Below are positions 577 to 64,000 of a stretch of DNA of 64,000 nt, piece by piece (the first letter of the stretch is position 1; every line of letters starts with the position of its first letter). Under the pieces are notes generated by a model. It saw nothing but the letters and a program-made list of their open reading frames with translations. It was not told the DNA's origin and ran no database searches. The DNA is from Macrostomum lignano (taxonomy: Eukaryota): assembly GCA_002269645.1 (NCBI GenBank), contig NIVC01000201.1, forward strand, positions 620,001-684,000. Reading direction: 5' to 3'. The position numbers were made by a program, and so were the translations under genes.

Positions 577-2042
577 ATGGAGTATTCTTTTACCTCCGAC
601 ACGTCCGAGGCTGCTGGAGCACCAACCGAGGTTGGCACCGCGGCCCAGCCGGACATTCGCAACACCGGAACCCCCGGTGCCTCTCAATCTGCCGCTGCCG
701 CCGCTCAGGATAATACCGGAGTGGCTGGACAAGACAGCGGACCTCAGATTTCAAAAAAGAAGGCCCGTAGCATTGCTCGCTACAAAGCCTTTCTCCAGCG
801 CAAAACGGAGGAACGGAGGAATGCGAAAGCCGCCCCTCCGGCCACCTCTGAGGAGGGTGCCGGTAACTCTGCGAACCCCGCGGAGGAGCCGACATCCGAC
901 AAGGGGGTGGACCCCGCACGCCGGTCTGATGCGTCAGGTGCCGCCGAAGCTCCTGGTGCGGCTGGCCCCTCCCGTGACCGGACCTCTGCCCGTGTGGAAG
1001 CTCCCACGGCCGTGGAGGGATCCAAAGCGGGGGGCGCTGGCCAAACAACAAAGCCGAAGCGAACCTACGCGGCTATGGCCAAGAGGCAGCCGGCCCTGGT
1101 TATCCAAGGCCAGGAGACGCCTCTTACGGCCGAACAGCTCGACCTTATCTGGCGCAGGTTGGACTCCCACCTGGTCAAGATGGCCTTGAGCGGCACTACC
1201 ATTCGAGTCCAAAAGACGAAAGTCGAGGACCAAGCCCTCTATATCCAGCCCGCCGACAGCCAGTCAGGACAGCAGCTCCTTGAGCTGCTGAAAACCTTCG
1301 ACTGGGGTACGGAGCTGGAGAACCTGTTCATCTACAGGGAGGACGAGCGACCCCGGACACACCGGCACCGTGCCTGGATCCCGGCTCGCAGCTGCATCAC
1401 CAAGGCCGACGAGCTGCGTCACCTGCTAGTGGCTTCCAACCCGGAGCTACCGGCCAACGGTGTCGTAGTTCACGAGACCATCTCCAAGCCGGGCGGAGAC
1501 GGTTTCACGGCTATTCTTGGACTGTCGGACAGCTGGATGCTCCGCTACCCGGACACGTCCATCATCTCTGTCGGGCTGTTGCAGATTCAGCTCTTTAGCT
1601 TTGAGTCTGACGCCACCCGCCCACCGCCCCCGGAGAAGCGTAAGCGGGCAGTCGGGGGCTCTGCCGGGCGGAAACGCCCAGGAAAAGAAGCTCCCGGTCG
1701 TCACGACCCCTCCGAGGACGTGGACCCTGTCAGAGGGAAAGCCGCGAAAGCTGCAGCAACAGGCGGACGTGGAAAGGGCCGGAAACCCGCCCGGAACACT
1801 ATCCGCTCTGGTCTGACTCAGCGCGCGAAGCAGCTGCTGGACACCGCCAAGGCCCCCAACCGCAGCCACCCCCAGCCCAGTGTCACCACTGCGGCTCCCC
1901 CGGAAAACCGGGCCGAGAGCGAGAATGCCGCCCAGGTAGCGACATCGCCCTCGACCATGGAATCCATCCGGGAGGAGCCCATGGAGCTGGAGCCTGGAGC
2001 TATCGGCGAGGCAGAAGAGGCAGCTCTCCTGCACAACTCGCC

Positions 2043-2046
<4 letters not shown>
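577..2046 (+). CDS. LINE ORF1 (gag-like), 489 aa
   Basis: Long uninterrupted ORF upstream of the APE/RT ORF. Low-complexity ends flank a core (AWIP...L..LL..SNPEL...G...ILGL) resembling LOA-type ORF1 (DUF4780-like, by eye). Confidence 0.8.
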
Positions 2047-5789
<3,743 letters not shown>

Positions 5790-18449: not shown

Positions 18450-20760
18450 AAGGTCAAACTTACTGTAGTTCATTCAAAAAACGTATTTTGACTGATGGCT
18501 GGCAAGCATACTATGCGCTTCCCAACCATGTATTTGTCAATCACCACATGCAGGGATTCCCTGAGCGATATTCAAAAACAAAATGCTCCTCCATGGTTAT
18601 GGAGCTCGGGAGCAAGATCGATAAGGTGGATACGAAGGTGGCTCGGCTGGAAACCATGATGGCTGGGATCACCCAGCAGCTACGTGCTCAGACCACGGCC
18701 TTAGACAGCATCCGGAGCTTCGTTGCTGGAGCTGCTGCCGCGAGCCAGGCCTCGTCTGGGGTGGTGATTCCCAGGACTCCAGCGTCAACGATCACGGTGT
18801 GTTCAACTGGAGGCGCTTGGCCCAACATGACTGTCACCGGACCACCTCCCGCTGCTGCTGCTCAGTCCGGCCGGATCGTAGGAGTGAAGATCTAACTGTT
18901 CCTCCTACCTCACGACAAGTTGCATCCCTGCAAATAACAAAAATCTTTGCTTTTAAAGCACCAAACACCATGATTTTGTACAGAAAAAACATCACACACG
19001 AGATAAACCGACTTGAAAAAAATTACGGCTACAGATTGAAAGGATTTTTTACAACTTGCAAAAAACTGGTGCTTCCCTATCTCCACAGTGTATTAGATTG
19101 ATATTCGATTTCGAGTACTTCTGCTTGCTCTCTGTCGCTGAAAATTGACATGCAGGACTTCACCCAGACACTAATCGATTACTCAAACTGAACTAAAGCT
19201 TAATGGTCGAGAACTATTCGAGAAAAACTGATGTTCCTATCCCCACAGTGCATTACATGTAGATGTAGATATTCGATTTCGTTGTTCGAGTAATCAGCAA
19301 AAACGCCGTCGATAGCAACCAAGTTTCTTGTGCCATTTGTCAAGCAGAAGAGCCACCAAAAGCAGACGGTGCAGCAGCAATTGATTGGGTGAGTTGTAAA
19401 ATTCTTGTACGTATAAATACCTGCTGCAGCCTCTGTGCCAAATATCCATACACACGTAACGCACTTTACTTTTAATTCTTGTGCATGCACTACTGGTAGA
19501 TCGAGTGCTCATCCTGTCTGGACTGATCCACTGCATCTGTGCATCGACAACGCAAGAAGAGGCAAACTTCTGCTGCTCGAACTGCATCAATTTACTCAAC
19601 TGATTGATTAGCATACAATTCAAAGGCTTAACTCTGTGCAGCATTAAGTATGCATGACGCGTACGCTATTCAAGGACTTCTAGACTATAAGGACGCACCA
19701 CTCCAAATTTGTGCAAAAAGTTTAGAAGGCCAAGTTTTTGTATTTTTTTTCGACCCTGACTTTTCAGAAGTAGATGCAGGTCTTGCATTTTTGGTCTATA
19801 GAGAAGCATGTAACGATACATGAGAATGTATAAAAAGTTTTAGCTGCACTTTCCACCAGTTTACTGAGTTTTCTAGAGAATTTTACAGTCAGTATATCAG
19901 CAGGTCCAACTGTCATGCTGAATCTGAGTAGTCAACTTCTTCGTTCTCTTTTACTAGACAACCAAGACATTCCTTTCGGATGATGTCTTACTTCGACAAG
20001 CAGGATAAAATTATGAAGATAGCAATTCTTGAGACAAATGCATTTGGTCTATAATGTGACCCATACGCTCGTAGAATGCATTTAACAGCAGAAAGAAACA
20101 AAAACTGCTTGTTTTGCTTCATTTTTGCTAGACGAAAATGCGCGTGCTATGCTGTAACATACATTTTAAACTTTTTCCACAAACGGCGAGTGTTCCAACA
20201 TCAGTTTTTCTCGAATAGTTCTCGAGCATGAAGCTTTGAGTTCAGTTTGAGTTATGATAATCGATTAGTGTCTGGGTGAAGTTCTGCATGTCAATTTTCA
20301 GCGACAGAGAGCAAGCAGAAGTACTCGAAATCGAATATCAATTTAATACACTGTGGAGATAGGGAAGCACCAGTTTTTTGCAAATTGTAAAAAATCCTTT
20401 CAATCTGTAGCCGTAATTTTTTTCAAGTCGGTTTATCTCATGGGTGATGTTTTTTCTGTAAAAAATCATGGTGTTTGGTGCTTTAAAAGCAGAGATTTTT
20501 GTTATTTCCGAATATCGATCTTGAATCGCTCGGTGAATCCCTGCAAAATCAACACCTGCATTTTGTTGATCCGAACGATCCAACTGAGCATACAAACAGC
20601 ATCGAAGGCGCTGGGCACAAGTGAAGGTGAAGTTCCACAGCCAGCATGACACTTGTGACGACCTTTTTGACTCCCATCTTAGCAAGTTCCTCTGGTGCCA
20701 ACCTATCCAAAGAAGTGCTTTAGCAACTTTCTGTACTGCGTGACCCATTACTACGCTGTG
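18450..20760 (+). mobile_element. Merlin/IS1595-type transposase remnant split by a 2-kb insertion
   Basis: TDGWQAYYALPNHVFVNH (18490-18545) continues after the insertion as HFVDPNDPTEHTNSIEG...FDSHLSKFLW (20550-20700). Confidence 0.7.
18549..20545. mobile_element. Non-autonomous long-TIR DNA element
   Basis: Outer imperfect TIR TGCAGGGATTC.../...GAATCCCTGCA; about 305-bp inverted repeats at 18932-19235 and 20197-20507; imperfect target duplication AATCACCACATGCA/AATCAACACCTGCA. Confidence 0.7.
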
Positions 20761-23344: not shown

Positions 23345-44034
<20,690 letters not shown>

Positions 44035-47512: not shown

Positions 47513-47654
47513 TAAGGACACCTGAGCGTGATTTTTCATCATGCTCTTGACATTTTGAAGCTCTCAAAATTTTTAAGCACGGACATTGCTATAGTTAAGC
47601 TTTAACTCATGTTGCTGTGTATTTATATTATTATTACACATGCTTTGTCTGTCC

Positions 47655-47937
<283 letters not shown>

Positions 47938-48789: not shown

Positions 48790-50257
<1,468 letters not shown>

Positions 50258-50339: not shown

Positions 50340-50824
50340 GAGCTCAGATATCCGCATACTTGCCCGTGAAATATCCGCGTTTGTTAGACGCCAGAGGGGG
50401 GGGGGCGGAGACGGATTTTACTGCGGATTGAAAATGATTAAAGCTGCTCGGGCCGCCGCCCCTACGCTCGTATAGTCAGTGGTTTCTAGCCGAGCGCAAC
50501 TGTCTGTTATCTGCTTGGAAACAGAAAAGCAGCAATGTGGAAAGACGCAAAAAAAGAAAACCTGGCACTTAGCTGTCATTCGCCGTGAAAAAAAAACAGA
50601 ATTCCTAAGGATATTCGAGACAGCACGAGGTCCTTGATTTTCATTATTTTTTCGATTTTAATTTCTGACTTAATACTCGTATTTTTAACGCTCTTTTTCA
50701 TTAACAATTTTACGTCATCTTCCTTACGTTGTCCTCCAATTGTCTTTGACAAGCTCTTTTATTAGAAGTGGCGATGGAAATTTCCACCTGAGACATCGAA
50801 AACTCCCTGTTTGAGGCGCCAATT

Positions 50825-52548
50825 TGTGCAGTTTGACATGACAATTAGTGCAGTTTGACATGACATGACAATCAGTGCACTTTGACATGACAATTAGAGC
50901 AGTTTGACATGGGGATTAGTGCAGTTTGACATGACAATCAGTGCAGCTTAACATGCCAATTAGTGCAGTTTGACATGACAATCAGTGCAGCTTAACATGC
51001 CAATTAGTGCAGTTTGACATGACAATCAGTGCAGCTTAACAAGCCAATTAGTGCAGTTTGACATGACAATTAGAGCAGTTTGACATGACAATCAGTGCAG
51101 TTTGACATGAAGATTAGAGCAGTTTGACATGACAATAAGTGCAGTTTGACATGACATGACAATCAGTGCACTTTGACATGACAATTAGAGCAGTTTGACA
51201 TGGGGATTAGTGCAGTTTGACATGACAATCAGTGCAGTTTGACATGACAATTAGAGCAGTTTGACATGACAATCAGTGCAGTTTGACATGACAATTAGAG
51301 CAGTTTGACATGACAATCAGTGCAGTTTGACATGACAATTAGAGCAGTTTGACATGACAATTAGTGCAGTTTGACATGACAATCAGTGCAGCTTAACATG
51401 CCAATTAGTGCAGTTTGACATGACAATCAGTGCAGCTTAACATGCCAATTAGTGCAGTTTGACATGACAATTAGAGCAGTTTGACATGACAATCAGTGCA
51501 GTTTGACATGAAGATTAGAGCAGTTTGACATGACAATAAGTGCAGTTTGACATGACATGACAATCAGTGCACTTTGACATGACAATTAGAGCAGTTTGAC
51601 ATGGGGATTAGTGCAGTTTGACATGACAATCAGTGCAGTTTGACATGACAATTAGAGCAGTTTGACATGACAATCAGTGCAGTTTGACATGACAATTAGA
51701 GCAGTTTGACAAGCCAATCAGTGCAGTTTCACATGACAATCAGTGCAGTTTGACATGACAATCAGTGCAGCTTAACATGCCAATTTGTGCAGTTTGACAT
51801 GACAATTAGAGCAGTTTGACATGACAATCAGTGCAGTTTGACATGAAGATTAGAGCAGTTTGACATGGGGATTAGTGCAGTTTGACATGGGGATTAGTGC
51901 AGTTTGACATGACATGACAATCAGTGCACTTTGACATGACAATTAGAGCAGTTTGACATGGGGATTAGTGCAGTTTGACATGACAATCAGTGCAGTTTGA
52001 CATGACAATTAGAGCAGTTTGACATGACAATCAGTGCAGATTGACATGACAATTAGAGCAGTTTGACATGACAATCAGTGCAGTTTGACATGACAATTAG
52101 AGCAGTTTGACAAGCCAATCAGTGCAGTTTCACATGACAATCAGTGCAGTTTGACATGACAATCAGTGCAGCTTAACATGCCAATTTGTGCAGTTTGACA
52201 TGACAATTAGAGCAGTTTGACATGACAATCAGTGCAGTTTGACATGAAGATTAGAGCAGTTTGACATGGGGATTAGTGCAGTTTGACATGGGGATTAGTG
52301 CAGTTTGACATGACATGACAATCAGTGCACTTTGACATGACAATTAGAGCAGTTTGACAAGGGGATTAGTGCAGTTTGACATGACAATCAGTGCAGTTTG
52401 ACATGACAATTAGAGCAGTTTGACATGACAATAAGTGCAGTTTGACATGACAATTAGAGCAGTTTGACATGACAATAAGTGCAGTTTGACATGACAATTA
52501 GAGCAGTTTGACATGACAATCAGTGCAGTTTGACATGACAATCAGTGC
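50825..52548. repeat. 22-bp satellite (AGTTTGACATGACAAT.AG.GC) with higher-order blocks
   Basis: Tandem periodicity; variant clusters recur every 290-400 bp. Confidence 0.95.
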
Positions 52549-52788: not shown

Positions 52789-54310
52789 CAGATCCTCAGT
52801 TGCTGGGCCAGCCTCCCAGATTCTCAGTTGCTGGGCCAGCCTCCCAGATCCTCAGTTGCTGGGCCAGCCTCCCAGATTCTCAGTTGCTGGGCCAGCCTCC
52901 CAGTTTCTCAGTTGCTGGGCCAGCCTCCCAGATTCTCAGTTGCTGGGCCAGCCTCCCAGATCCTCAGTTGCTGGGCCAGCCTCCCAGATCCTCAGTTGCT
53001 GGGCCAGCCTCCCAGATCCTAAGTTGCTGGGCCAGCCTCCCAGATTCTCAGTTGCTGGGCCAGCCTCCCAGATCCTCAGTTTCTGGGCCAGCCTCCCAGA
53101 TCCTAAGTCGCTGGGCCAGCCTCCCAGATTCTCAGTTGCTGGGCCAGCCTCTCAGATCCTAAGTTTCTGGGCCAGCCTCCCAGATCCTCAGTTGCTGGGC
53201 CAGCCTCCCAGATCCTCAGTTGCTGGGCCAGCCTCCCAGATCCTCAGTTTCTGGGCCAGCCTCCCAGATCCTCAGTTGCTGGGCCAGCCTCCCAGATCCT
53301 CAGTTGCTGGGCCAGCCTCCCAGATCCTCAGTTGCTGGGCCAGCCTCCCAGATCCTCAGTTGCTGGGCCAGCCTCTCAGATCCTAAGTTTCTGGGCCAGC
53401 CTCCCAGATCCTCAGTTGCTGGGCCAGCCTCCCAGATCCTCAGTTGCTGGGCCAGCCTCCCAGATCCTAAGTTTCTGGGCCAGCCTCCCAGATCCTCAGT
53501 TGCTGGGCCAGCCTCCCAGATCCTCAGTTGCTGGGCCAGCCTCCCAGATCCTCAGTTGCTGGGCCAGCCTCCCAGATCCTCAGTTGCTCGGCCAGCCTCC
53601 CAGATCCTCAGTTGCTGGGCCAGCCTCCCAGATCCTCAGTTGCTGGGCCAGCCTCCCAGATCCTCAGTTGCTGGGCCAGCCTCTCAGATCCTAAGTTTCT
53701 GGGCCAGCCTCCCAGATCCTCAGTTGCTGGGCCAGCCTCCCAGATCCTCAGTTGCTGGGCCAGCCTCCCAGATCCTCAGTTGCTGGGCCAGCCTCCCAGA
53801 TCCTCAGTTGCTGGGCCAGCCTCCCAGATCCTCAGTTTCTGGGCCAGCCTCCCAGATCCTCAGTTGCTGGGCCAGCCTCCCAGATCCTCAGTTGCTGGGC
53901 CAGCCTCCCAGATCCTCAGTTGCTGGGCCAGCCTCCCAGATCCTCAGTTGCTGGGCCAGCCTCTCAGATCCTAAGTTTCTGGGCCAGCCTCCCAGATCCT
54001 CAGTTGCTGGGCCAGCCTCCCAGATCCTCAGTTGCTGGGCCAGCCTCCCAGATCCTCAGTTGCTGGGCCAGCCTCCCAGATCCTCAGTTGCTGGGCCAGC
54101 CTCCCAGATCCTCAGTTGCTGGGCCAGCCTCCCAGATCCTCAGTTGCTGGGCCAGCCTCCCAGATCCTCAGTTGCTGGGCCAGCCTCCCAGATCCTCAGT
54201 TGCTGGGCCAGCCTCCCAGATCCTCAGTTGCTCGGCCAGCCTCCCAGATCCTCAGTTGCTGGGCCAGCCTCCCAGATCCTCAGTTGCTAGGCCTGCCTCC
54301 CAGATCCTGA
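52789..54310. repeat. 28-bp satellite (GATCCTCAGTTGCTGGGCCAGCCTCCCA)
   Basis: Tandem periodicity; it explains the LGQPPRSS ORFs. Confidence 0.95.
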
Positions 54311-54545
54311 GTTCCCACTAGCAGTCGGACCTACTAAGAAATTCGCAGTTTCCCATCATCGGCAACCCAGACTCAGCAATCTAGTTCCAGGTCTCACTCT
54401 CAGGTACTCGTACTAATGTAAAATGAACAAAGACTGCTAAAATCAAAAGTTTTGTAAAAAACAAAAAGGAACTGAAATGAAGCAGCTCGATGGCGGTGCC
54501 CTCTAATTGAATATTAGTATGAGCATTTAAATATTGGCATCGGCT

Positions 54546-55076
54546 TCAGGCCTCCGGCTGGTCAGTGCTTGGCTTGAAGTCTCTCTCGAACCACTTCATG
54601 GACCAGTACGGCAGCAGGCCCAGCTCAGTGGAGGCGACGTTCTGCGCCTGCGGCAGCACAGACAGCAGCGCCACGGGCTTGCTGCTGGACGGGTGCCGCA
54701 GGCACAGCAGGTACTCGCGCCCGACTTCGTAGGCCAGAGGCTCCTCGGGATTGTGCGCCGGCGCCTCGTACACCTTCTGCGGCGCCGGCTGGTCGTCGCT
54801 GCCGTCGCTAGCCTGGCGCTGGGGCATCAGGTAGATGAGCAGCTGGGTGTTGTCCTCCTCGGCCAGGCCGACCACATTCAGCGGCTGCAGCTTGCACTCG
54901 GCCAGGTCAAATGAAAGTCGAACTTCGTAGTCTTCGGGATCGTTGGGCGATGGAACTCGGACAACGTGCTGCTGCTGCTGCCCGTCCGTGGAGCTGTTGT
55001 TGCCGACCGGCTGGACAACCAGAAATCCCAGCGGCTTTGACTGACCGCCGAGAAGAGAGCGGAATCGCTTTAGCAT
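54546..55076 (-). CDS. Orphan single-exon ORF, 176 aa, unknown function
   Basis: GC3-rich codon usage, ATG to TGA; no recognised domain. Confidence 0.65.
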   Translation of the reverse strand: MLKRFRSLLGGQSKPLGFLVVQPVGNNSSTDGQQQQHVVRVPSPNDPEDYEVRLSFDLAECKLQPLNVVGLAEEDNTQLLIYLMPQRQASDGSDDQPAPQKVYEAPAHNPEEPLAYEVGREYLLCLRHPSSSKPVALLSVLPQAQNVASTELGLLPYWSMKWFERDFKPSTDQPEA

Positions 55077-55334
55077 GCTTTCTTTGCTTGGCTTCTGCTA
55101 CTGAGAGTCCTGGCTGTTTAAATCTGCCACTGCTGTTTCCGCTCTGCTACTTGATAATAAGGCGGGTTTTGACATAGACTAAAGTGGGCGATAAGTGATG
55201 GCAGCTAAGCAGTGCACTTTTCAAGCAGAGCACTAAATCTATGCGACTCTAAAATTTTACATTAATTTTAAGTGGGTAGCGCGCCAATGCTTGCTTACTG
55301 AATGAGCGCCAATGCTTGCTTACTGAATGAGCGC

Positions 55335-55630
55335 CACTGTCTCTTGGTGGGCACCCCTGTTTGGCGCCCCCTGTCTCTTCGTGCGAGCCCCTGTCTCTTG
55401 GTGGGCGCTCCTGTCGCTTGGTGAGTGTCCCTGTCTCATGGTAGTCCCCCGGCTCTTGGTGAGTGCCCCAGTCTCTTTGTAGAATCCCCTGCCTCTTGGT
55501 GGGCGCCCCTGTCTCTTGGTGGGATCCCATGTCTCTTGGTGAGCGCCTCTGTCTCTTGGTGGGCGCCTCTGTCTCTTGGTGGGCGCCCCTGTCTCTTGGT
55601 GGGCACCCCTGTCTCTTGGTGGGCACCCCA
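55335..55630. repeat. 20-bp minisatellite (same family as 29300-29700); mirror copy at 62655-62950
   Basis: CTGTCTCTTGGTGGGCGCCC units. Confidence 0.9.
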
Positions 55631-55631
55631 C

Positions 55632-56000
55632 TACTAAGGGATTCCGAATGGCTCGATTTTGGAGGTGAGGTGGGTGTCAACCCTCCGCGCCTCTCATTGG
55701 CTGGCGCCCCGATCACTAGGTGATCGATACCCGTATCGATATCGGCGCTCGGCGCGCGCGCGCGCCGCAGGCGCCAAGCGCCGCAGGCGACCCTCCCCAG
55801 CCGCAGGCGCACCTACCGATATTAGATCCCAATAAATCAATCAGATCCCAAATCAATCAGATCCCAAGCGCACCCTCCCGAGCCGCAGGCGCCCATGCAG
55901 CAGGCGCCCATGCCGCAGGCACCCCGAGTGTACACTCTACCGATATGTGTGTACACCGATATGTAGTCATCGATACGGGCCTCTTCCCCTCTCTCACCTA
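55632..56000. other. Non-coding hairpin/iteron module (further copies at 62287-62655 and 63635-64000)
   Basis: Clustered palindromes, 6 GCCGCAGGCG-type repeats and AGATCCCAA(AT)CAATC repeats. Confidence 0.8.
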
Positions 56001-59000
56001 CATCTCAACTAGCGAAATCGAACCCAGGTCGCGCCCATACTAGGACACTACACGGTTGTGGGGTATAGGGAGCGAGAAGTTTCAACCCTAACGCTGACGC
56101 AGCCCTGTACAGTGAGAGTGTACGGGCAGAGAGGGGTGGGGCGGACAGAGAACCAGCCACTAGGTTGTTATACTGTTGAAGCATAGGGAGCGAGAAGTTT
56201 TAACCCCGATGCTGACGCAGCCCTGTACACTGAGCGTGTACGGGCAGAGGGTGGGTGGAAAGAGATGTGAATAACACAGCCTGCTGCAGGAGCCGGATAG
56301 AGAGGCGCATGCTAGGACAGAGAGGTAGTGTGAGTCACACACACCCCACAGAGAAAGCCATACAGAGGATAGAGAGCTCCCTCCCCAGTTGCAGGGGACA
56401 GAGAGGCAGGCAGGGTATGCAGGGGCATGCGAACCGTCAAGGGGCCACGCGAGGATAGAGTGGAGGAGCAGAGATGTGTCTGGACAGAGAGCCAGCCACG
56501 TGTGCGTAGTGTGAGGGAACAGAAACATATGGAGCAGGAGGGAGATAGGAAGCAAACGCGCAGGGTAAGGGAGCCACACAGGGCGGTACAGTGAGACACG
56601 GGCAGGGGTGGAGCCGTGCGTGGACAGAGCTGAACGGCACGGTCAGCTGCAGGAATAGGATGATAGAGAGGCGCGGAGGGGGACAGAGAGCAGTGTGCAG
56701 GGGTAGGCAGCCACGCAGGCTGGGGAACAGAGAGGCGCGTGTCAGCCAGTTGCAGCCCGGGACAGAGAAGTATGAAGGGGGGCCTGGGACAGAGTTCCGA
56801 GCAAGGCACAGAGGTAGGGTCCTGTAGCTATGTATAGGCAGGGAGCCACGCGAGGGCAGGACAGGGGAGCAGACATGCAAGTTGCATGCAAGGCCAGAGA
56901 GGTGTGCGCGGAGGGAGACAGAGAGCAGTGTGTAGGGGTAGGTAACAGCAAACTTTAGTAGCGGCGCGTGCGGGGACGGAGAAACCAGTCAGAGCATACA
57001 GAGACGTTACAGAGAGGTACACAAGCAGAGACCAAAGCGAGCAGAGCACATGTGTAGGGACAGAGACGTGAGGGAGAATCGACCAAAACACGCTATGTAT
57101 TTTCAAAAGTTGGTTTTAGTGCAACATGTTTAATAGTGGGTAGTATAATAGTATGTACATAGTAGGTATAATAGTAGTAATAATAGTAAGCATATTAGCC
57201 CAAAAGGTAGACTAAAACAGGCTAAACTGTGTGTACGCATCCTCATCACCCCACAAGCCCCCTCTCCCGCCAGACTCACTCTACCAAACCCTCCTGTATT
57301 GCTGCATGAAGGAAAATATAGTGTAAAAATACAGATCTTAACCGTCAGACCGCTGAAATCAGGGCACACTAGAGGGGGTTTCGGGGTCTGCATGCTCTAT
57401 GTAAGCTGCTTGAGGAGGTTCCAAGGGCGTTGGCGGGTTTCCATTATGTTTTGAAAAAAAACTAGAGGCTTAAATACAACGTTTTATTCAAAAAGTAGGT
57501 TATTTTAATGAAATAGCTGACACAATCATTGTCGAGAGTAGACATTTTTATAAGAAACCAGGCATTTTAGCAAAAATAAACCTTCAAACCACATAAAATT
57601 GAATAAAAAGCAGACATTTTCAATTATAAACCGCAAGTATTTTAATAGAAAAGTAAGCAAACAAGGCACAAAACCAGCAAATTTTACCTTTTTATTTTAA
57701 TGTTACTGATAAGGTAGAGAGTAGAAACTTGTGAGCTGTACGGAGTTAGAAAGTATTAACCATTATGTATCGTATGAATTATTAGTTCAGTACCAGCCAT
57801 TGGTCAAGCGAGCATTTATGAAGTTATTACGAGTGATGAAGGGATAGAGAGCTATATACAGGAAGACAGTATCCTTCTAAACCACCACGAACAGATTGCT
57901 AATAGAGATAAGCTTTGTCTGTGTGCAGTATGAGTAAGCGAAGGCGGGGCAAATACTTTTCCACATGCCGGACAGAACAGTATTGTGCTAGGATTTCTCT
58001 CGAAATCGCGGTACGTTACTAGTTTTTATCACACCATCCAGATGCGTCAACTAGTCAGCAGTAGTCATTTATATGTTATTAGAACTTACAAACCCAGGTC
58101 AAGTAAATATTACAAAGAGTATATTACGTACACACGCCAACTCCGAATACCAAGCCATACTAGTCTACTTGCAGTGCTCCTGGAGGGAAGGGACGGCGGG
58201 GTGTACATCCGGCAGGGTGGGCGTCCAGCGAGTGTACATCTGACAGGATGGGTGTTCAGCAAGTGTACATCTGACAGGGTGGGCGTTCAGCAAGTGTACC
58301 TTCAGCGTCGAGTAGGTGTACACCCGTCAGTGGGAACTCAGCCCCTCCCACCAATGTCGTGTGCATGCGGTTAGTCAGTATAGTGGTGGGGTAGACGGTG
58401 CAGGAAGGAAACCCAGATGCTGACGCTGCCCTGTACAGCGAGCAACCAGCCCTCCTGTAGCAGGAGGGGGACAGAGAGTGCGTGGAGGCAGTAGGAGATA
58501 GAGGACGCTACCCGGCATGTCGCAGCACGCGGCGCGGGACAGAGAGGCAGTGTGTAAGTCACCCCCACAGGGAAAGCTGCCCTGGCAGGAGGCGCGGGAC
58601 AGAGAGGCGGTGAATCACACCCCACGGAGAGAGCCGTACAGCGAGCTTCCCCACCCGAGTCCGGTAAATATTACAGAGTATTACGTGCACACGCCAGCCC
58701 TGAATACCAAGCCATACTAGTCTACCTGCAGTGCTCCCAGAGGGAAGGGATGGTCAGGAGTTACACACCAAGAATGCATTCATACAAAGAGTACACAACT
58801 CGAGCCCAGACACCAAGTCACAGTCTACTTACAGTAGAGATGGTAGATTAATAGCAAGATTATATTACAATTAGACCTCCCTAGCACATGAGGAGTGAAA
58901 TTCAATAATAATTGAATTCAATAATAATACAACATTTAGACGTAGTAATTTAATTACAAAATACCACTAACACTGAGCCAACGAATTGTAGGTTACAAAG

Positions 59001-62000
59001 GAGTTGCCACTCATATGGAAAGCCAGTATAATGCAGGTGTATATTATTAAAACATAGACAAAAACGATGCAGACGTATATACACACTATTGATTTTGTAC
59101 ATGTACATTTCGGCATATTACCACACATCGCAGGCACATATTATATATCGGGGATAGGTTAAAATACACACATCGTAGATGTAGAAGCAGACACAATGCA
59201 GGAAAATTATGATACGAGTGTACATATTAGTGCGTAAAAGTATCATATTATGACACCCTGTAGCACATATTGACATAATGCAGGGGAAAATATTGACAGA
59301 AATAGTACACAATTGTAGAGGTAACAACCCGCCAACTAGTAAGGACATCCAGCACTTGTTCAGGTTTTTATTATTTCGAGACGAGTGTCATGCCCCCGCA
59401 AGAGATCTTATCAGAAATTTGTTGAACTCCACTGCAACTCTCCCCAGAGCCTCCAAATGTGAGTTTTTAACCCAGGGTCGAGTACAAAGGACCCGCCCAC
59501 TCTTAACCCCAAGGGGTGATCGTAGCGGAGACCAAGTACAGTGCGGACGGAGAGGGGTAACAGAAAGCGCTGCATCAGACCGCAGGGCTGCATTCCTCCC
59601 CCGAGGTAGGCGCGTCAGCTCCCACTCCTCATTTAACCATCAAGTAAACTAAAGAAGTCAAGCAGAAAGCCTTACAATCACCCGCAACCAGCACAAGTAA
59701 GAGTACTTTCCACTAGAGAGCCATAGTGCAAGATTCGCGAGCCAAGTTGAAGAAGCACACCAAATTACACTAAAGACATATGTATTAAAAAGCATACCGG
59801 CACCTCTACAAAAACACAGTATGTACCGATTAAAGTTGCTTTTGGTGCAGTGTATTTAATAAAAAGCAGGTACCTAACACAAAAGTAGGCATCAATGCAG
59901 TGCACGGGCTAAACTGTATTTACAAACGCAGGGCAACGAACTACACACAATGTAGCGCATAGACATAATTGTACGCATAAATGTACGCAATTTCCGGTAT
60001 ATAGGACCAAATGTACACAATGTACACAAACACACACACACACACTCAGGCGCATCCTGCAGCGCATCCTGCAGCACCGATCGCCGCAGGCGATGGCGCC
60101 ATCGGCAGGAAGCTCTTGCTGTGAATACGCCTGAGTGTGTGTGTGTGTGTTTGTGTACGTAATATACTCTTTGTAATATTTACTTGACCTGGGTTTGTAA
60201 GTTCTAATAACATATAAATGACTACTGCTGACTAGTTGACGCATCTGGATGGTGTGATAAAAACTAGTAACGTACCGCGATTTCGAGAGAAATCCTAGCA
60301 CAATACTGTTCTGTCCGGCATGTGGAAAAGTATTTGCCCCGCCTTCGCTTACTCATACTGCACACAGACAAAGCTTATCTCTATTAGCAATCTGTTCGTG
60401 GTGGTTTAGAAGGATACTGTCTTCCTGTATATAGCTCTCTATCCCTTCATCACTCGTAATAACTTCATAAATGCTCGCTTGACCAATGGCTGGTACTGAA
60501 CTAATAATTCATACGATACATAATGGTTAATACTTTCTAACTCCGTACAGCTCACAAGTTTCTACTCTCTACCTTATCAGTAACATTAAAATAAAAAGGT
60601 AAAATTTGCTGGTTTTGTGCCTTGTTTGCTTACTTTTCTATTAAAATACTTGCGGTTTATAATTGAAAATGTCTGCTTTTTATTCAATTTTATGTGGTTT
60701 GAAGGTTTATTTTTGCTAAAATGCCTGGTTTCTTATAAAAATGTCTACTCTCGACAATGATTGTGTCAGCTATTTCATTAAAATAACCTACTTTTTGAAT
60801 AAAACGTTGTATTTAAGCCTCTAGTTTTTTTTCAAAACATAATGGAAACCCGCCCAACGCCCTTGGAACCTCCTCAAGCAGCTTACATAGAGCATGCAGA
60901 CCCCGAAACCCCCTCTAGTGTGCCCTGATTTCAGCGGTCTGACGGTTAAGATCTGTATTTTTACACTATATTTTCCTTCATGCAGCAATACAGGAGGGTT
61001 TGGTAGAGTGAGTCTGGCGGGAGAGGGGGCTTGTGGGGTGATGAGGATGCGTACACACAGTTTAGCCTGTTTTAGTCTACCTTTTGGGCTAATATGCTTA
61101 CTATTATTACTACTATTATACCTACTATGTACATACTATTATACTACCCACTATTAAACATGTTGCACTAAAACCAACTTTTGAAAATACATAGCGTGTT
61201 TTGGTCGATTCTCCCTCACGTCTCTGTCCCTACACATGTGCTCTGCTCGCTTTGGTCTCTGCTTGTGTACCTCTCTGTAACGTCTCTGTATGCTCTGACT
61301 GGTTTCTCCGTCCCCGCACGCGCCGCTACTAAAGTTTGCTGTTACCTACCCCTACACACTGCTCTCTGTCTCCCTCCGCGCACACCTCTCTGGCCTTGCA
61401 TGCAACTTGCATGTCTGCTCCCCTGTCCTGCCCTCGCGTGGCTCCCTGCCTATACATAGCTACAGGACCCTACCTCTGTGCCTTGCTCGGAACTCTGTCC
61501 CAGGCCCCCCTTCATACTTCTCTGTCCCGGGCTGCAACTGGCTGACACGCGCCTCTCTGTTCCCCAGCCTGCGTGGCTGCCTACCCCTGCACACTGCTCT
61601 CTGTCCCCCTCCGCGCCTCTCTATCATCCTATTCCTGCAGCTGACCGTGCCGTTCAGCTCTGTCCACGCACGGCTCCACCCCTGCCCGTGTCTCACTGTA
61701 CCGCCCTGTGTGGCTCCCTTACCCTGCGCGTTTGCTTCCTATCTCCCTCCTGCTCCATATGTTTCTGTTCCCTCACACTACGCACACGTGGCTGGCTCTC
61801 TGTCCAGACACATCTCTGCTCCTCCACTCTATCCTCGCGTGGCCCCTTGACGGTTCGCATGCCCCTGCATACCCTGCCTGCCTCTCTGTCCCCTGCAACT
61901 GGGGAGGGAGCTCTCTATCCTCTGTATGGCTTTCTCTGTGGGGTGTGTGTGACTCACACTACCTCTCTGTCCTAGCATGCGCCTCTCTATCCGGCTCCTG

Positions 62001-63211
62001 CAGCAGGCTGTGTTATTCACATCTCTTTCCACCCACCCTCTGCCCGTACACGCTCAGTGTACAGGGCTGCGTCAGCATCGGGGTTAAAACTTCTCGCTCC
62101 CTATGCTTCAACAGTATAACAACCTAGTGGCTGGTTCTCTGTCCGCCCCACCCCTCTCTGCCCGTACACTCTCACTGTACAGGGCTGCGTCAGCGTTAGG
62201 GTTGAAACTTCTCGCTCCCTATACCCCACAACCGTGTAGTGTCCTAGTATGGGCGCGACCTGGGTTCGATTTCGCTAGTTGAGATGTAGGTGAGAGAGGG
62301 GAAGAGGCCCGTATCGATGACTACATATCGGTGTACACACATATCGGTAGAGTGTACACTCGGGGTGCCTGCGGCATGGGCGCCTGCTGCATGGGCGCCT
62401 GCGGCTCGGGAGGGTGCGCTTGGGATCTGATTGATTTGGGATCTGATTGATTTATTGGGATCTAATATCGGTAGGTGCGCCTGCGGCTGGGGAGGGTCGC
62501 CTGCGGCGCTTGGCGCCTGCGGCGCGCGCGCGCGCCGAGCGCCGATATCGATACGGGTATCGATCACCTAGTGATCGGGGCGCCAGCCAATGAGAGGCGC
62601 GGAGGGTTGACACCCACCTCACCTCCAAAATCGAGCCATTCGGAATCCCTTAGTAGTGGGGTGCCCACCAAGAGACAGGGGTGCCCACCAAGAGACAGGG
62701 GCGCCCACCAAGAGACAGAGGCGCCCACCAAGAGACAGAGGCGCTCACCAAGAGACATGGGATCCCACCAAGAGACAGGGGCGCCCACCAAGAGGCAGGG
62801 GATTCTACAAAGAGACTGGGGCACTCACCAAGAGCCGGGGGGACTACCATGAGACAGGGACACTCACCAAGCGACAGGAGCGCCCACCAAGAGACAGGGG
62901 CTCGCACGAAGAGACAGGGGGCGCCAAACAGGGGTGCCCACCAAGAGACAGTGGCGCTCATTCAGTAAGCAAGCATTGGCGCTCATTCAGTAAGCAAGCA
63001 TTGGCGCGCTACCCACTTAAAATTAATGTAAAATTTTAGAGTCGCATAGATTTAGTGCTCTGCTTGAAAAGTGCACTGCTTAGCTGCCATCACTTATCGC
63101 CCACTTTAGTCTATGTCAAAACCCGCCTTATTATCAAGTAGCAGAGCGGAAACAGCAGTGGCAGATTTAAACAGCCAGGACTCTCAGTAGCAGAAGCCAA
63201 GCAAAGAAAGC

Positions 63212-63637
63212 ATGCTAAAGCGATTCCGCTCTCTTCTCGGCGGTCAGTCAAAGCCGCTGGGATTTCTGGTTGTCCAGCCGGTCGGCAACAACAGCTCCAC
63301 GGACGGGCAGCAGCAGCAGCACGTTGTCCGAGTTCCATCGCCCAACGATCCCGAAGACTACGAAGTTCGACTTTCATTTGACCTGGCCGAGTGCAAGCTG
63401 CAGCCGCTGAATGTGGTCGGCCTGGCCGAGGAGGACAACACCCAGCTGCTCATCTACCTGATGCCCCAGCGCCAGGCTAGCGACGGCAGCGACGACCAGC
63501 CGGCGCCGCAGAAGGTGTACGAGGCGCCGGCGCACAATCCCGAGGAGCCTCTGGCCTACGAAGTCGGGCGCGAGTACCTGCTGTGCCTGCGGCACCCGTC
63601 CAGCAGCAAGCCCGTGGCGCTGCTGTCTGTGCTCTAG
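63212..63637 (+). pseudogene. 3'-truncated duplicate (141 aa) of the 54546-55076 gene
   Basis: Identical sequence up to 63633, then fused to the module copy, which supplies TAG. Confidence 0.85.
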
Positions 63638-64000
63638 GTGAGAGAGGGGAAGAGGCCCGTATCGATGACTACATATCGGTGTACACACATATCGGTAGAG
63701 TGTACACTCGGGGTGCCTGCGGCATGGGCGCCTGCTGCATGGGCGCCTGCGGCTCGGGAGGGTGCGCTTGGGATCTGATTGATTTGGGATCTGATTGATT
63801 TATTGGGATCTAATATCGGTAGGTGCGCCTGCGGCTGGGGAGGGTCGCCTGCGGCGCTTGGCGCCTGCGGCGCGCGCGCGCGCCGAGCGCCGATATCGAT
63901 ACGGGTATCGATCACCTAGTGATCGGGGCGCCAGCCAATGAGAGGCGCGGAGGGTTGACACCCACCTCACCTCCAAAATCGAGCCATTCGGAATCCCTTA

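What the first reader, a model, noticed from the sequence alone, without database searches (positions are those of the whole stretch)
55632..60127. Candidate non-coding hairpin-ended element (about 4.5 kb) with shared GCCGCAGGCG iterons at both ends
Seen: the left module has hairpins CGATCAC-TAG-GTGATCG (55710-55726) and ATCGATAC-CC-GTATCGAT (55723-55740), perfect palindromes CGGCGCGCGCGCGCGCCG (55750-55767) and GAGTGTACACTC (55926-55937), an 11-bp inverted pair (55730-55740/55969-55979), and GCCGCAGGCG x4 plus 2 variants. The palindrome-centre loop holds the same GCCGCAGGCG (60083-60092), the palindrome CGATGGCGCCATCG and a TCCTGC/GCAGGA stem, giving a Y-shaped fold. Known: iterated binding sites plus T/Y terminal hairpins mark rolling-hairpin and rolling-circle origins (parvovirus NS1/Rep, HUH endonucleases), and tail-to-tail dimers form through the terminal hairpin. 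Inference: this may be an undescribed non-autonomous element mobilised in trans. No Rep, NS1, transposase or capsid ORF is visible.
Basis: partly seen in the sequence, partly recalled or inferred. Interest (0 to 1): 0.75.

Follow-up and report, generated by a model that had tools for sequence, protein, structure and literature searches.

The report
Rearranged transposon-like insertion, flatworm gene upstream
The flagged stretch is one arm of an 8.4-kb non-coding insertion upstream of a flatworm (Macrostomum lignano) orphan gene that looks like a non-autonomous DNA transposon later folded into a large palindrome that also copied host gene DNA, and not a hairpin-replicating virus-like element.

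Summary

- **Source:** the window is Macrostomum lignano assembly Mlig_3_7, contig NIVC01000201.1.
- **Extent:** the flagged 55632-60127 is the left arm plus centre of an 8,376-nt non-coding insertion (55630-64005). It sits in a 20-bp minisatellite upstream of an orphan gene (54546-55076, minus strand).
- **Empty sites:** two paralogous loci have the satellite uninterrupted and no trace of the inserted DNA.
- **Ends:** the insertion ends in identical inverted 371-nt modules (5'-ACTACT...AGTAGT-3'). Each carries four GCCGCAGGCG repeats, and the ends are flanked by a 6-bp direct repeat, GGGGTG. This fits a non-autonomous DNA transposon with terminal inverted repeats.
- **Right "end":** it is not a terminus. 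It is the axis of a 3.5-kb-arm inverted duplication.
- **Host DNA in the arms:** they run 976 nt beyond the element into satellite, promoter and the first 140 codons of the gene. This excludes a tail-to-tail replicative dimer.
- **Coding:** no Rep, transposase or other coding remnant was found.
- **Untested:** genome-wide copy number could not be measured with these tools.
- **Unexplained:** solitary motif copies lie exactly at the arm boundary and at the palindrome centre.

The parts
54546..55076 (-). Host orphan gene: a 176-aa copy of Macrostomum lignano Mlig029755. The left arm of the inverted duplication begins inside it, at 54655.
   Evidence: The ORF and its translation are. It is on record as a called gene in GCA_002269645.1. 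The only homologs are two 98%-identical M. lignano paralogs, and Pfam gives no hit.
54645..54654 (-). Solitary GCCGCAGGCG inside the gene, directly abutting the arm boundary at 54654|54655.
   Evidence: Located. The motif is ancestral coding sequence: it is the only copy in each paralogous locus, L002 and L003.
55077..55330 (-). 5' flank and presumed promoter of the gene, including a 25-bp x2.2 repeat.
   Evidence: Sequence and tandem repeats. The region is collinear with L002 and L003.
55331..55629 (.). 20-bp minisatellite, gene-proximal part (S3), which is the target of the insertion. Its last 6 nt (55624-55629, CACCCC on the + strand, GGGGTG on the other) are one copy of the putative target-site duplication.
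   Evidence: The satellite is uninterrupted (about 570 nt) in L002 and L003.
55630..56000 (+). Terminal module M1 (371 nt). It starts ACTACTAAGGG and holds three hairpin/palindrome sites and GCCGCAGGCG x4 plus 2 variants. GC is 0.61 and CpG observed/expected is 1.12.
56001..58134 (+). Arm segment X: a purine-rich block with GACAGAGAG-type sub-repeats (56001-57080), then an AT-rich part. No coding signal.
58135..60020 (+). Segment Y (1,886 nt), present only in the left arm and bounded by 7-bp GTACACA (58128-58134 and 60021-60027). It is native rather than an insertion, so the right arm carries a deletion.
   Evidence: A repeat pair, 58122-58196 / 58679-58753 (89%), spans the X|Y boundary. Sequence.
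60022..60158 (.). Palindrome centre: a 34-nt (CA)n/(TG)n inverted repeat (60022-60055 / 60125-60158) with a 69-nt spacer. The spacer is itself a degenerate palindrome centred on GCCGCAGGCG (60083-60092).
   Evidence: 3 of 500 shuffles reach the observed self-complementarity. The Rfam hit here is only a sub-threshold CA-repeat hairpin match.
60152..62286 (-). Inverted copy of X, forming the right arm.
62287..62657 (-). Module copy M2, part of the right arm.
62658..62959 (.). Inverted copy (S2) of the host 20-bp satellite, now inside the insertion.
62960..63633 (+). Inverted copy of the host promoter and the first 140 codons of the gene (CDS 63212-63633). It is followed by one untemplated nucleotide at 63634.
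   Evidence: It is identical to the adjacent gene copy, whereas the paralogs are only about 94% identical.
63635..64000 (-). Module copy M3, the outer right terminus. It runs to 64005, 5 nt beyond the window, and is followed by GGGGTG/CACCCC and the distal satellite part S1.
   Evidence: L001 shows the 1,076 nt beyond the window.

Best explanation
An 8,376-nt non-coding element (window 55630-64005) inserted into the 20-bp minisatellite upstream of one copy of the Macrostomum lignano orphan gene Mlig029755.

**What the element is (inferred).** It most likely belongs to a non-autonomous DNA transposon family with terminal inverted repeats.
- It has identical inverted 371-nt terminal modules (M) ending 5'-ACTACT...AGTAGT-3'.
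- Each terminal module carries four same-orientation GCCGCAGGCG repeats 135-260 nt from the tip, plus short palindromes. These would be the binding sites of a transposase or integrase supplied in trans.
- Insertion duplicated 6 bp of target, GGGGTG.

**How the palindrome arose (inferred).** The large palindrome is a secondary chromosomal rearrangement, not a replicative form. It copied 976 nt of host satellite, promoter and the first 140 codons of the gene. It was then rejoined non-homologously, with one added nucleotide, to the inner side of the right terminal module. This gave a third M copy. One arm also lost the 1,886-nt segment Y between 7-bp GTACACA microhomologies, which makes the palindrome asymmetric.

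**Shown versus inferred.** Shown: the anatomy, the junctions, the empty paralogous sites, the flanking 6-bp repeat and the absence of coding capacity. Inferred: transposition as the way in, the binding role of the repeats, and the order and mechanism of the rearrangement.

**What the confidence covers.** The stated confidence is for the whole statement. That the palindrome is a chromosomal inverted duplication containing host DNA, and not a replicative dimer, I hold at about 0.85.
For: **Source and gene.** Identified.

**Insertion relative to paralogs.**
- L002 and L003 show flank A, then satellite, promoter and gene, with no match to M, X or Y.
- Joining the two flanks while keeping exactly one GGGGTG recreates a 34-mer that occurs three times in the L002 satellite. 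No other overlap length from 0 to 12 does so.

**Defined terminus.** The ACTACT terminus is joined to satellite DNA at the same nucleotide in two different contexts: ggggtg|ACTACT at M3 and cacccc|ACTACT at M1 and M2.

**Repeats and hairpins.** The three M copies are 100% identical. The motif occurs 14 times against 0.13 expected. Hairpins are enriched in M.

**The arms contain host DNA.** They span 54655-58134 / 60152-63633 and differ only by two 1-nt homopolymer indels. The copied gene part is identical to the adjacent copy, whereas the paralogs are about 94% identical.

**Junctions typical of repair.**
- 7-bp GTACACA microhomology at the Y deletion, with Y shown to be native.
- One added nucleotide at 63634.
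- A 34-nt short inverted repeat with a 69-nt spacer at the axis. This matches the substrate described for fold-back priming into large palindromes (PMC7999016).

**Non-coding.**
- No ORF longer than 165 aa lies wholly inside the element.
- No Pfam hit in six frames of 57081-60020.
- No protein homologs.
Against: - No second, independent copy of M, X or Y could be found, because no tool here searches the M. lignano genome. Mobility therefore rests on a single insertion.
- The 6-bp flanking repeat lies in a 20-bp satellite, where a short phase overlap of the two flanks is not very improbable.
- M is CpG-island-like and carries an inverted CCAAT (ATTGG on the + strand) and GCCN3GGC-type sites. 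It could be a captured promoter rather than a transposon end.
- All duplicated parts are essentially identical, which is also what a long-read assembly error would give.
- The model does not explain why solitary GCCGCAGGCG copies sit exactly at the arm boundary (54645-54654) and at the palindrome axis (60083-60092).
Confidence: 0.5

Rival explanations
1. The structure is a purely chromosomal complex rearrangement with no transposon. A stretch of single-copy DNA from elsewhere, perhaps a CpG-island promoter region, was captured during break repair in the fragile minisatellite. Serial template switches of the fold-back / MMBIR type (microhomology-mediated break-induced replication) then duplicated and inverted it.
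For: - The junctions show microhomology (7 bp) and a 1-nt insertion.
- The arms include host DNA.
- M looks promoter-like: GC 0.61 and CpG observed/expected 1.12.
- No other copy was found in the 104 kb examined.
- The region directly upstream of the satellite differs among the paralogs, with a LINE 3' fragment in L002 and L003 only. This suggests an unstable spot.
Against: - Two independent junctions use exactly the same terminal nucleotide of M, in inverted orientation.
- Both are flanked by the same 6-mer in direct orientation, and removing one copy restores a paralog-like satellite unit.
- Random breakpoints would not coincide in this way.
Confidence: 0.25
2. Assembly artefact. Part or all of the palindrome and the third module copy was created by mis-joined or chimeric PacBio reads in a very repeat-rich neopolyploid genome.
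For: - The arms are identical except for two homopolymer-length indels, the typical residual long-read error.
- All three M copies are 100% identical.
- The genome is described as hard to assemble (PMC10733133, abstract).
Against: - The structure is asymmetric: 1,886 nt are missing from one arm, and the centre is non-palindromic. Missed-adapter artefacts do not give this.
- It has unique junctions, one with an added nucleotide.
- It lies more than 100 kb from either end of a 792-kb contig.
Confidence: 0.1
3. The region is a hairpin-ended, non-autonomous replicon copied by rolling-hairpin or rolling-circle replication. An HUH/Rep-type nuclease recognises GCCGCAGGCG iterons, and the palindrome is a tail-to-tail dimer.
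For: - The motif is iterated in M and also sits in a small stem-loop at the palindrome axis.
- A solitary motif copy abuts the outer arm boundary. A motif-directed nuclease could explain this.
Against: - The arms extend 976 nt beyond the element's terminus into host satellite, promoter and coding DNA.
- The terminal 80 nt of M are not self-complementary.
- The element has inverted identical ends and a flanking 6-bp duplication.
- No Rep, NS1 or HUH signal was found in the ORFs tested or in six frames of 57081-60020.
- Pattern scans of the viral contig collection found nothing.
Confidence: 0.05

Closest known systems
Long-TIR / Foldback-type non-autonomous DNA transposons (Drosophila FB and MuDR-related long-TIR elements)
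   Same: - Non-coding.
- Long, near-identical inverted arms (M+X, about 2.5 kb) containing internal sub-repeats.
- Subterminal iterated short motifs.
- A flanking target duplication.
- Associated with local rearrangement.
   Different: - The duplication is 6 bp. FB is 9 bp from memory, and MuDR relatives give 4-10 bp (PMC10045372).
- The arms are not simple tandem arrays.
- Part of the 'arm' is host DNA, so the present palindrome is at least partly secondary.
- No family copies are known.
Maverick/Polinton elements and their derivatives
   Same: A 6-bp target-site duplication and terminal inverted repeats of hundreds of bp (PMC8097293; PMC10045372). The tip is a doubled trinucleotide.
   Different: - The reported tips are 5'-(AG)3 or 5'-(AGT)2. 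This element has 5'-(ACT)2, the complement.
- No polymerase, integrase, ATPase, protease or capsid remnant.
- It is 8.4 kb, including duplicated host DNA.
Large palindromes / fold-back inversions formed next to short inverted repeats after a break (yeast, CHO and tumour amplicons), and inverted-repeat-guided template switching
   Same: - A short inverted repeat (34 nt) with a non-palindromic spacer at the axis.
- Kilobase arms of essentially 100% identity that include unique host sequence.
- Microhomology and 1-nt-insertion junctions.
- An asymmetric deletion near the centre.

The mechanism is described in PMC7999016.
   Different: The rearrangement is interstitial and small, with no chromosome-scale consequence. 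It is nested in what looks like a transposon insertion. The outer end is rejoined to a third copy of the terminal module.
Parvovirus telomeres and HUH/Rep origins
   Same: Short hairpins and iterated GC-rich motifs, with a motif in a small stem-loop.
   Different: - The hairpins are internal, 80-140 nt from the tip, so the tip is not a fold-back telomere.
- The ends are inverted copies flanked by a target duplication.
- The 'dimer' contains host DNA.
- No Rep was found.

Membership tests
TIR (cut-and-paste / integrase-type) DNA transposon, non-autonomous | Two termini that are inverted copies of each other | tested here: met
   M1 (55630-56000, +) and M3 (63635-64005, -) are 100% identical over the 366 nt held in the window. 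The tips were read from L001.
TIR (cut-and-paste / integrase-type) DNA transposon, non-autonomous | Target-site duplication of fixed length flanking the termini | tested here: met
   GGGGTG lies on both sides. Only removal of exactly 6 nt restores a satellite unit seen in a paralog. The evidence is weakened because the target is a 20-bp repeat and only one insertion is available.
TIR (cut-and-paste / integrase-type) DNA transposon, non-autonomous | Empty (uninterrupted) site at homologous loci | tested here: met
   L002 and L003 have a continuous satellite and no M, X or Y.
TIR (cut-and-paste / integrase-type) DNA transposon, non-autonomous | Multiple dispersed copies with the same termini, and an autonomous relative encoding the transposase | not testable with these tools
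   No searchable M. lignano genome is on hand. There were 0 hits in the rest of the window, L002 and L003, in metagenome and viral scans, and among proteins.
Foldback (FB-like) elements | Long inverted arms built of tandem sub-repeats, with little or no unique middle | tested here: inconclusive
   The arms M+X are about 2.5 kb and identical. The sub-repeats are dispersed or degenerate rather than tandem arrays. About 2 kb of asymmetric middle is present.
Foldback (FB-like) elements | 9-bp target duplication (Drosophila FB, from memory) | tested here: not met
   6 bp.
Maverick/Polinton | 6-bp target-site duplication and long terminal inverted repeats | tested here: met
   The defining features are taken from PMC8097293.
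Maverick/Polinton | Terminal motif 5'-(AG)3...(CT)3-3' or 5'-(AGT)2...(ACT)2-3' | tested here: not met
   The tips read 5'-ACTACT...AGTAGT-3'.
Maverick/Polinton | Genes or remnants for protein-primed polymerase, integrase, ATPase, protease and capsid proteins | tested here: not met
   No ORF longer than 165 aa lies wholly inside the element. No Pfam hit at E <= 0.1 in six frames of 57081-60020. ORF searches were empty.
Rolling-hairpin replicon (parvovirus-like) / HUH-Rep mobilised element | Self-complementary telomere at the physical terminus | tested here: not met
   The terminus is at 55630 and the first hairpin starts at 55710. The predicted fold leaves the tip largely unpaired.
Rolling-hairpin replicon (parvovirus-like) / HUH-Rep mobilised element | Dimer junctions made of element sequence only | tested here: not met
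   The arms include 976 nt of host satellite, promoter and coding sequence.
Rolling-hairpin replicon (parvovirus-like) / HUH-Rep mobilised element | Rep/NS1 (HUH plus helicase) encoded by the element or by relatives | tested here: inconclusive
   None was found in the element or in the window ORFs tested. Relatives elsewhere in the genome could not be searched.
Fold-back inverted duplication (chromosomal palindrome) | Arms contain ordinary host sequence and are near-identical | tested here: met
Fold-back inverted duplication (chromosomal palindrome) | Short inverted repeat with spacer at the axis, and microhomology or small insertions at the other junctions | tested here: met
   A 34-nt inverted repeat with a 69-nt spacer, 7-bp GTACACA and a 1-nt insertion.
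Fold-back inverted duplication (chromosomal palindrome) | Junctions supported by raw reads | not testable with these tools
   No read data are available.

The most novel reading that the evidence does not exclude
GCCGCAGGCG, an interrupted palindrome of the form (C)GCC-GCA-GGC(G), may be the recognition site of a sequence-specific DNA-binding or cutting protein that belongs to an undescribed Macrostomum transposon family. That family could be a non-coding derivative of a Maverick/Polinton-like element, given the 6-bp duplication and long inverted ends. Under this reading, binding or cutting at solitary motif copies directed where the palindrome began (axis, 60083-60092) and where copying stopped (54654|54655). 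The motif would then drive local palindrome formation.
Probability: 0.1. Interest if true: 0.6.

Novelty: new member of a known kind. Interest (0 to 1): 0.3.

Why it matters
If dispersed copies confirm it, this defines the termini, target duplication and candidate binding repeats of an uncharacterised non-autonomous DNA transposon in Macrostomum lignano, a flatworm model whose very large repeat fraction is mostly unclassified. It also gives a clean, nucleotide-resolved example of a transposon insertion seeding an inverted duplication that copies a neighbouring gene's promoter and 5' coding part. The event is dated as very recent by near-zero divergence. The coincidence of a rare 10-mer with two rearrangement landmarks is a small but concrete lead on sequence-directed fragility. 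It does not reveal a new replication mode or a virus-like replicon.

Tried and rejected
- **Rfam and tRNA scans.**
  - Rfam at gathering thresholds on the whole window, and tRNA search, found nothing.
  - Rfam at permissive E-value on 55300-60300 gave only a sub-threshold mir-3149 match. It is a CA/TG-repeat hairpin at the centre and was rejected.
  - A tRNA-like T-arm I thought I saw at 56013-56055 was not called by either tool and was dropped.
- **Searches for other copies.**
  - blastn of 55630-60160 against the rest of the window, L002 and L003: 0 hits.
  - Exact-pattern scans with the terminus, the hairpin core and the spaced motif triplet in metagenome contigs and viral contigs: 0 hits.
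  - Protein search with the 107-aa ORF across M: nothing.
  - Exhaustive representative search with the 165-aa ORF in X: one weak low-complexity repeat ORF, rejected.
- **The host's own repeats are not in the protein collection.** The best match to the window's LINE ORF is 41-44% identical, so ORF-based copy finding cannot work.
- **Pfam.** The 10 longest window ORFs found only LINE domains. Ten further ORFs found only C-type lectin. Six X-marked frames of 57081-60020 found nothing.
- **A local blastn self-comparison** of the monomer returned only the centre hit. I used the repeat finder instead.
- **Y as a nested insertion with a 7-bp duplication:** considered and rejected, because a repeat spans the X|Y boundary.
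- **A simple 1,348-bp tandem duplication on the right side:** considered and rejected, because the satellite next to M3 has the opposite orientation to that next to M2.

Full report
**1. What the window is**

The window is eukaryotic and extremely repeat-rich. It holds many minisatellite arrays, two non-LTR retrotransposons with endonuclease, reverse-transcriptase and RNase H domains, no Rfam family and no tRNA. An exact-protein look-up of the 176-aa ORF at 54546-55076 (minus strand) placed the window on contig NIVC01000201.1 (791,733 bp) of GCA_002269645.1. The coordinates of that look-up put the window at record positions 620001-684000. Papers identify this accession as the Macrostomum lignano Mlig_3_7 assembly. 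Locus L001 is the reverse complement of window 44546-65076, so it shows 1,076 nt beyond the window's right end.

**2. Check of the observation**

- GCCGCAGGCG occurs 14 times in the window against 0.13 expected, and no shuffle reaches 14.
- The 371-nt module has three hairpin or palindrome sites with stems of at least 7 bp. My count scores a site once per loop length and gives 6, against 0.16 per dinucleotide shuffle.
- As single-stranded DNA the module folds with z = -3.5.
- The centre folds into a 31-bp stem with small hairpins in the loop, z = -10.6.

**3. The larger anatomy**

The flagged stretch lies inside an inverted duplication with arms 54655-58134 and 60152-63633. The alignment is 3,482 nt long, and the only differences are two single-base homopolymer-length indels.

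I name the parts as follows.

| Part | Window coordinates | Notes |
|---|---|---|
| S3 | 55331-55629 | 20-bp satellite, gene-proximal |
| M1 | 55630-56000 (+) | terminal module |
| X | 56001-58134 | left-arm segment |
| Y | 58135-60020 | left arm only |
| Centre | 60022-60055 / 60125-60158 | 34-nt inverted repeat, 69-nt spacer |
| X inverted | 60152-62286 | right-arm segment |
| M2 | 62287-62657 (-) | module copy |
| S2 | 62658-62959 | inverted satellite copy |
| Promoter + gene start | 62960-63633 | inverted copy, first 140 codons |
| Extra nucleotide | 63634 | untemplated |
| M3 | 63635-64005 (-) | module copy, outer right end |
| S1 and flank A | beyond the window | seen in L001 |

Y is native to the left arm. 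A repeat pair, 58122-58196 / 58679-58753, spans the X|Y boundary. The right arm therefore carries a 1,886-nt deletion bounded by 7-bp GTACACA.

The 69-nt spacer is itself a degenerate palindrome; only 3 of 500 shuffles reach its self-complementarity. It is centred on the motif copy at 60083-60092.

**4. The arms contain a host gene**

The ORF at 54546-55076 is a called gene. Its only relatives are two 98%-identical M. lignano paralogs, BOX15_Mlig029755g1 and g3. The left arm starts at 54655, inside this gene. The right arm holds an inverted copy of the satellite, the 5' flank and the first 140 codons. That copy is identical to the adjacent gene copy, whereas the paralogs are about 94% identical.

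A replicative tail-to-tail dimer of a mobile replicon would contain element sequence only.

**5. Comparison with paralogous loci**

I fetched 20 kb around each paralog, as L002 and L003. Both show flank A, then a LINE 3' fragment, about 570 nt of uninterrupted 20-bp satellite, the promoter and the gene. Neither has any match to M, X, Y or the centre, and nor does the rest of the window. Window 55630-64005 (8,376 nt) is therefore an insertion in the satellite that is specific to this copy.

Its outer ends are M3 and M1 in inverted orientation. The junctions read ...caaacaGGGGTG|ACTACTAAGGG... and ...CCCTTAGTAGT|GGGGTGcccacc.... Joining the flanks with exactly one GGGGTG recreates a 34-mer present three times in the L002 satellite. 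No other overlap length from 0 to 12 does this.

The same terminal nucleotide of M is thus joined to satellite DNA in two independent contexts. That argues for a defined end rather than a random breakpoint.

**6. Coding capacity**

- No ORF wholly inside the element exceeds 165 aa.
- ORFs from M and X have no homologs, apart from one low-complexity artefact.
- Six frames of 57081-60020, with X at each stop, hit no Pfam family at E <= 0.1.
- The window's other ORFs give only LINE and C-type lectin domains.

The element is non-coding, and no Rep, transposase or capsid gene lies nearby.

**7. Most likely mechanism**

The evidence so far is identical inverted termini, a 6-bp flanking duplication, an empty site in the paralogs, and subterminal same-orientation repeats 135-260 nt from the tip. 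Together these are the anatomy of a non-autonomous terminal-inverted-repeat DNA transposon. On that reading the GCCGCAGGCG repeats are the likely binding sites for a protein supplied in trans. This last point is inference.

The palindrome is best explained as a secondary repair product, and two variants fit equally well.
- **(i)** The element had short ends (M only). A break beside the pre-existing 34-nt inverted repeat led to fold-back priming. Copying ran back through X, M1, the satellite, the promoter and the gene to 54655. The end was then joined, with one added nucleotide, to the inner side of the right end. The fold-back mechanism beside short inverted repeats is described in PMC7999016.
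- **(ii)** The element was natively a long-arm foldback type. A template switch within the inverted M copies carried synthesis out of the left end into host DNA, followed by a non-homologous return.

Both variants need the Y deletion in one arm. Such an asymmetry would limit hairpin extrusion beyond the 34-bp stem (inference). The essentially zero divergence means that the events are very recent, or that the arms are homogenised, or that the assembly is wrong.

**8. What remains unexplained**

Outside the three M copies, the 10-mer occurs only twice in the window. One copy is in the centre spacer. The other is at 54645-54654, directly abutting the arm boundary. This second copy is ancestral coding sequence, present once in each paralogous 20-kb locus.

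With a flanking C, the motif is an interrupted palindrome, CGCC-GCA-GGCG. It also fits the GCCN3GGC pattern of AP-2-type binding sites. That resemblance is from memory and is a lead only.

A protein bound at the motif that blocks synthesis, or a nuclease that cuts beside it, would link both coincidences. I cannot test this here.

**9. Comparison with known systems**

- **Target duplication length.** Six bp is characteristic of Maverick/Polinton and of IS3EU/GingerRoot. The latter have TA..TA tips (PMC10045372; PMC8097293).
- **Tips.** Maverick tips are reported as 5'-(AG)3 or 5'-(AGT)2. This element has 5'-(ACT)2 and no gene remnants, so membership is not supported.
- **Foldback elements.** They share long arms and non-coding nature, but Drosophila FB makes 9-bp duplications (from memory).
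- **Rolling-hairpin and HUH systems.** They fail on terminal structure and on dimer content.

I file the element as an unclassified, non-autonomous transposon-like insertion with terminal inverted repeats, which carries a secondary fold-back duplication.

**10. Limits**

No tool here searches the M. lignano genome. The protein collection lacks the host's own repeats: the best match to the window's LINE is 41-44% identical. Metagenome and viral pattern scans were empty. Copy number, family termini and any autonomous partner therefore remain untested, and read-level support for the junctions could not be checked.

**Verdict**

The feature is a new member of a known kind, of modest interest, with one curious loose end: the motif at the rearrangement landmarks.

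Noticed in passing
window 577-5685 (+) and 33077-37776 (-): Two non-LTR retrotransposons with endonuclease, reverse-transcriptase and RNase H domains. The second has a long open 965-aa ORF. The nearest database proteins are only 41-44% identical, and the named ones are from the barnacle Amphibalanus.
   Followed up: partly
window 62960-63633 (+), CDS part 63212-63633: A second copy of the orphan gene that carries the promoter and the first 140 codons, reading into the inverted module M3. It could give a truncated or chimeric transcript.
   Followed up: no
window 29301-29697; also 55331-55629 and 62658-62959: The same 20-bp satellite family (GGCGCCCCTGTCTCTTGGTG-like) occurs at a third, unrelated place in the window at about 84% identity. 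It is therefore a dispersed minisatellite, not specific to this gene's upstream region.
   Followed up: no
L002 8550-9150 and the matching part of L003: Both paralogous loci carry a LINE 3'-end fragment directly upstream of the satellite, with a reading frame for the cysteine-rich C-terminus of a retrotransposon ORF2. This locus lacks it. The spot just upstream of the satellite has therefore been hit independently.
   Followed up: partly
window 18932-19235 and 20197-20507: A separate 311-nt inverted repeat pair at 95% identity, about 960 nt apart, in AT-rich DNA. It may be another small element with inverted ends. Its ends do not resemble module M.
   Followed up: partly
window 43500-43965, 47646-47937 and 49180-49580: Arrays of a short-period (4-8 nt register) repeat occur three times at 96-98% identity, one of them inverted relative to the other two. 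They flank the C-type lectin gene at 48790-50257 (-).
   Followed up: no
window 50809-52548 and 52789-54313: Two large minisatellites lie directly downstream of the orphan gene: a 22-bp unit (about 78 copies, with a 401-bp higher-order period) and a 28-bp unit (about 54 copies, 96% matches). Both are conserved in position in the paralogous loci.
   Followed up: no
window 60022-60158: A sub-threshold Rfam match to mir-3149 on both strands (47 bits against a gathering score of 100). It is produced by the (CA)n/(TG)n inverted repeat and is not evidence of a microRNA.
   Followed up: yes
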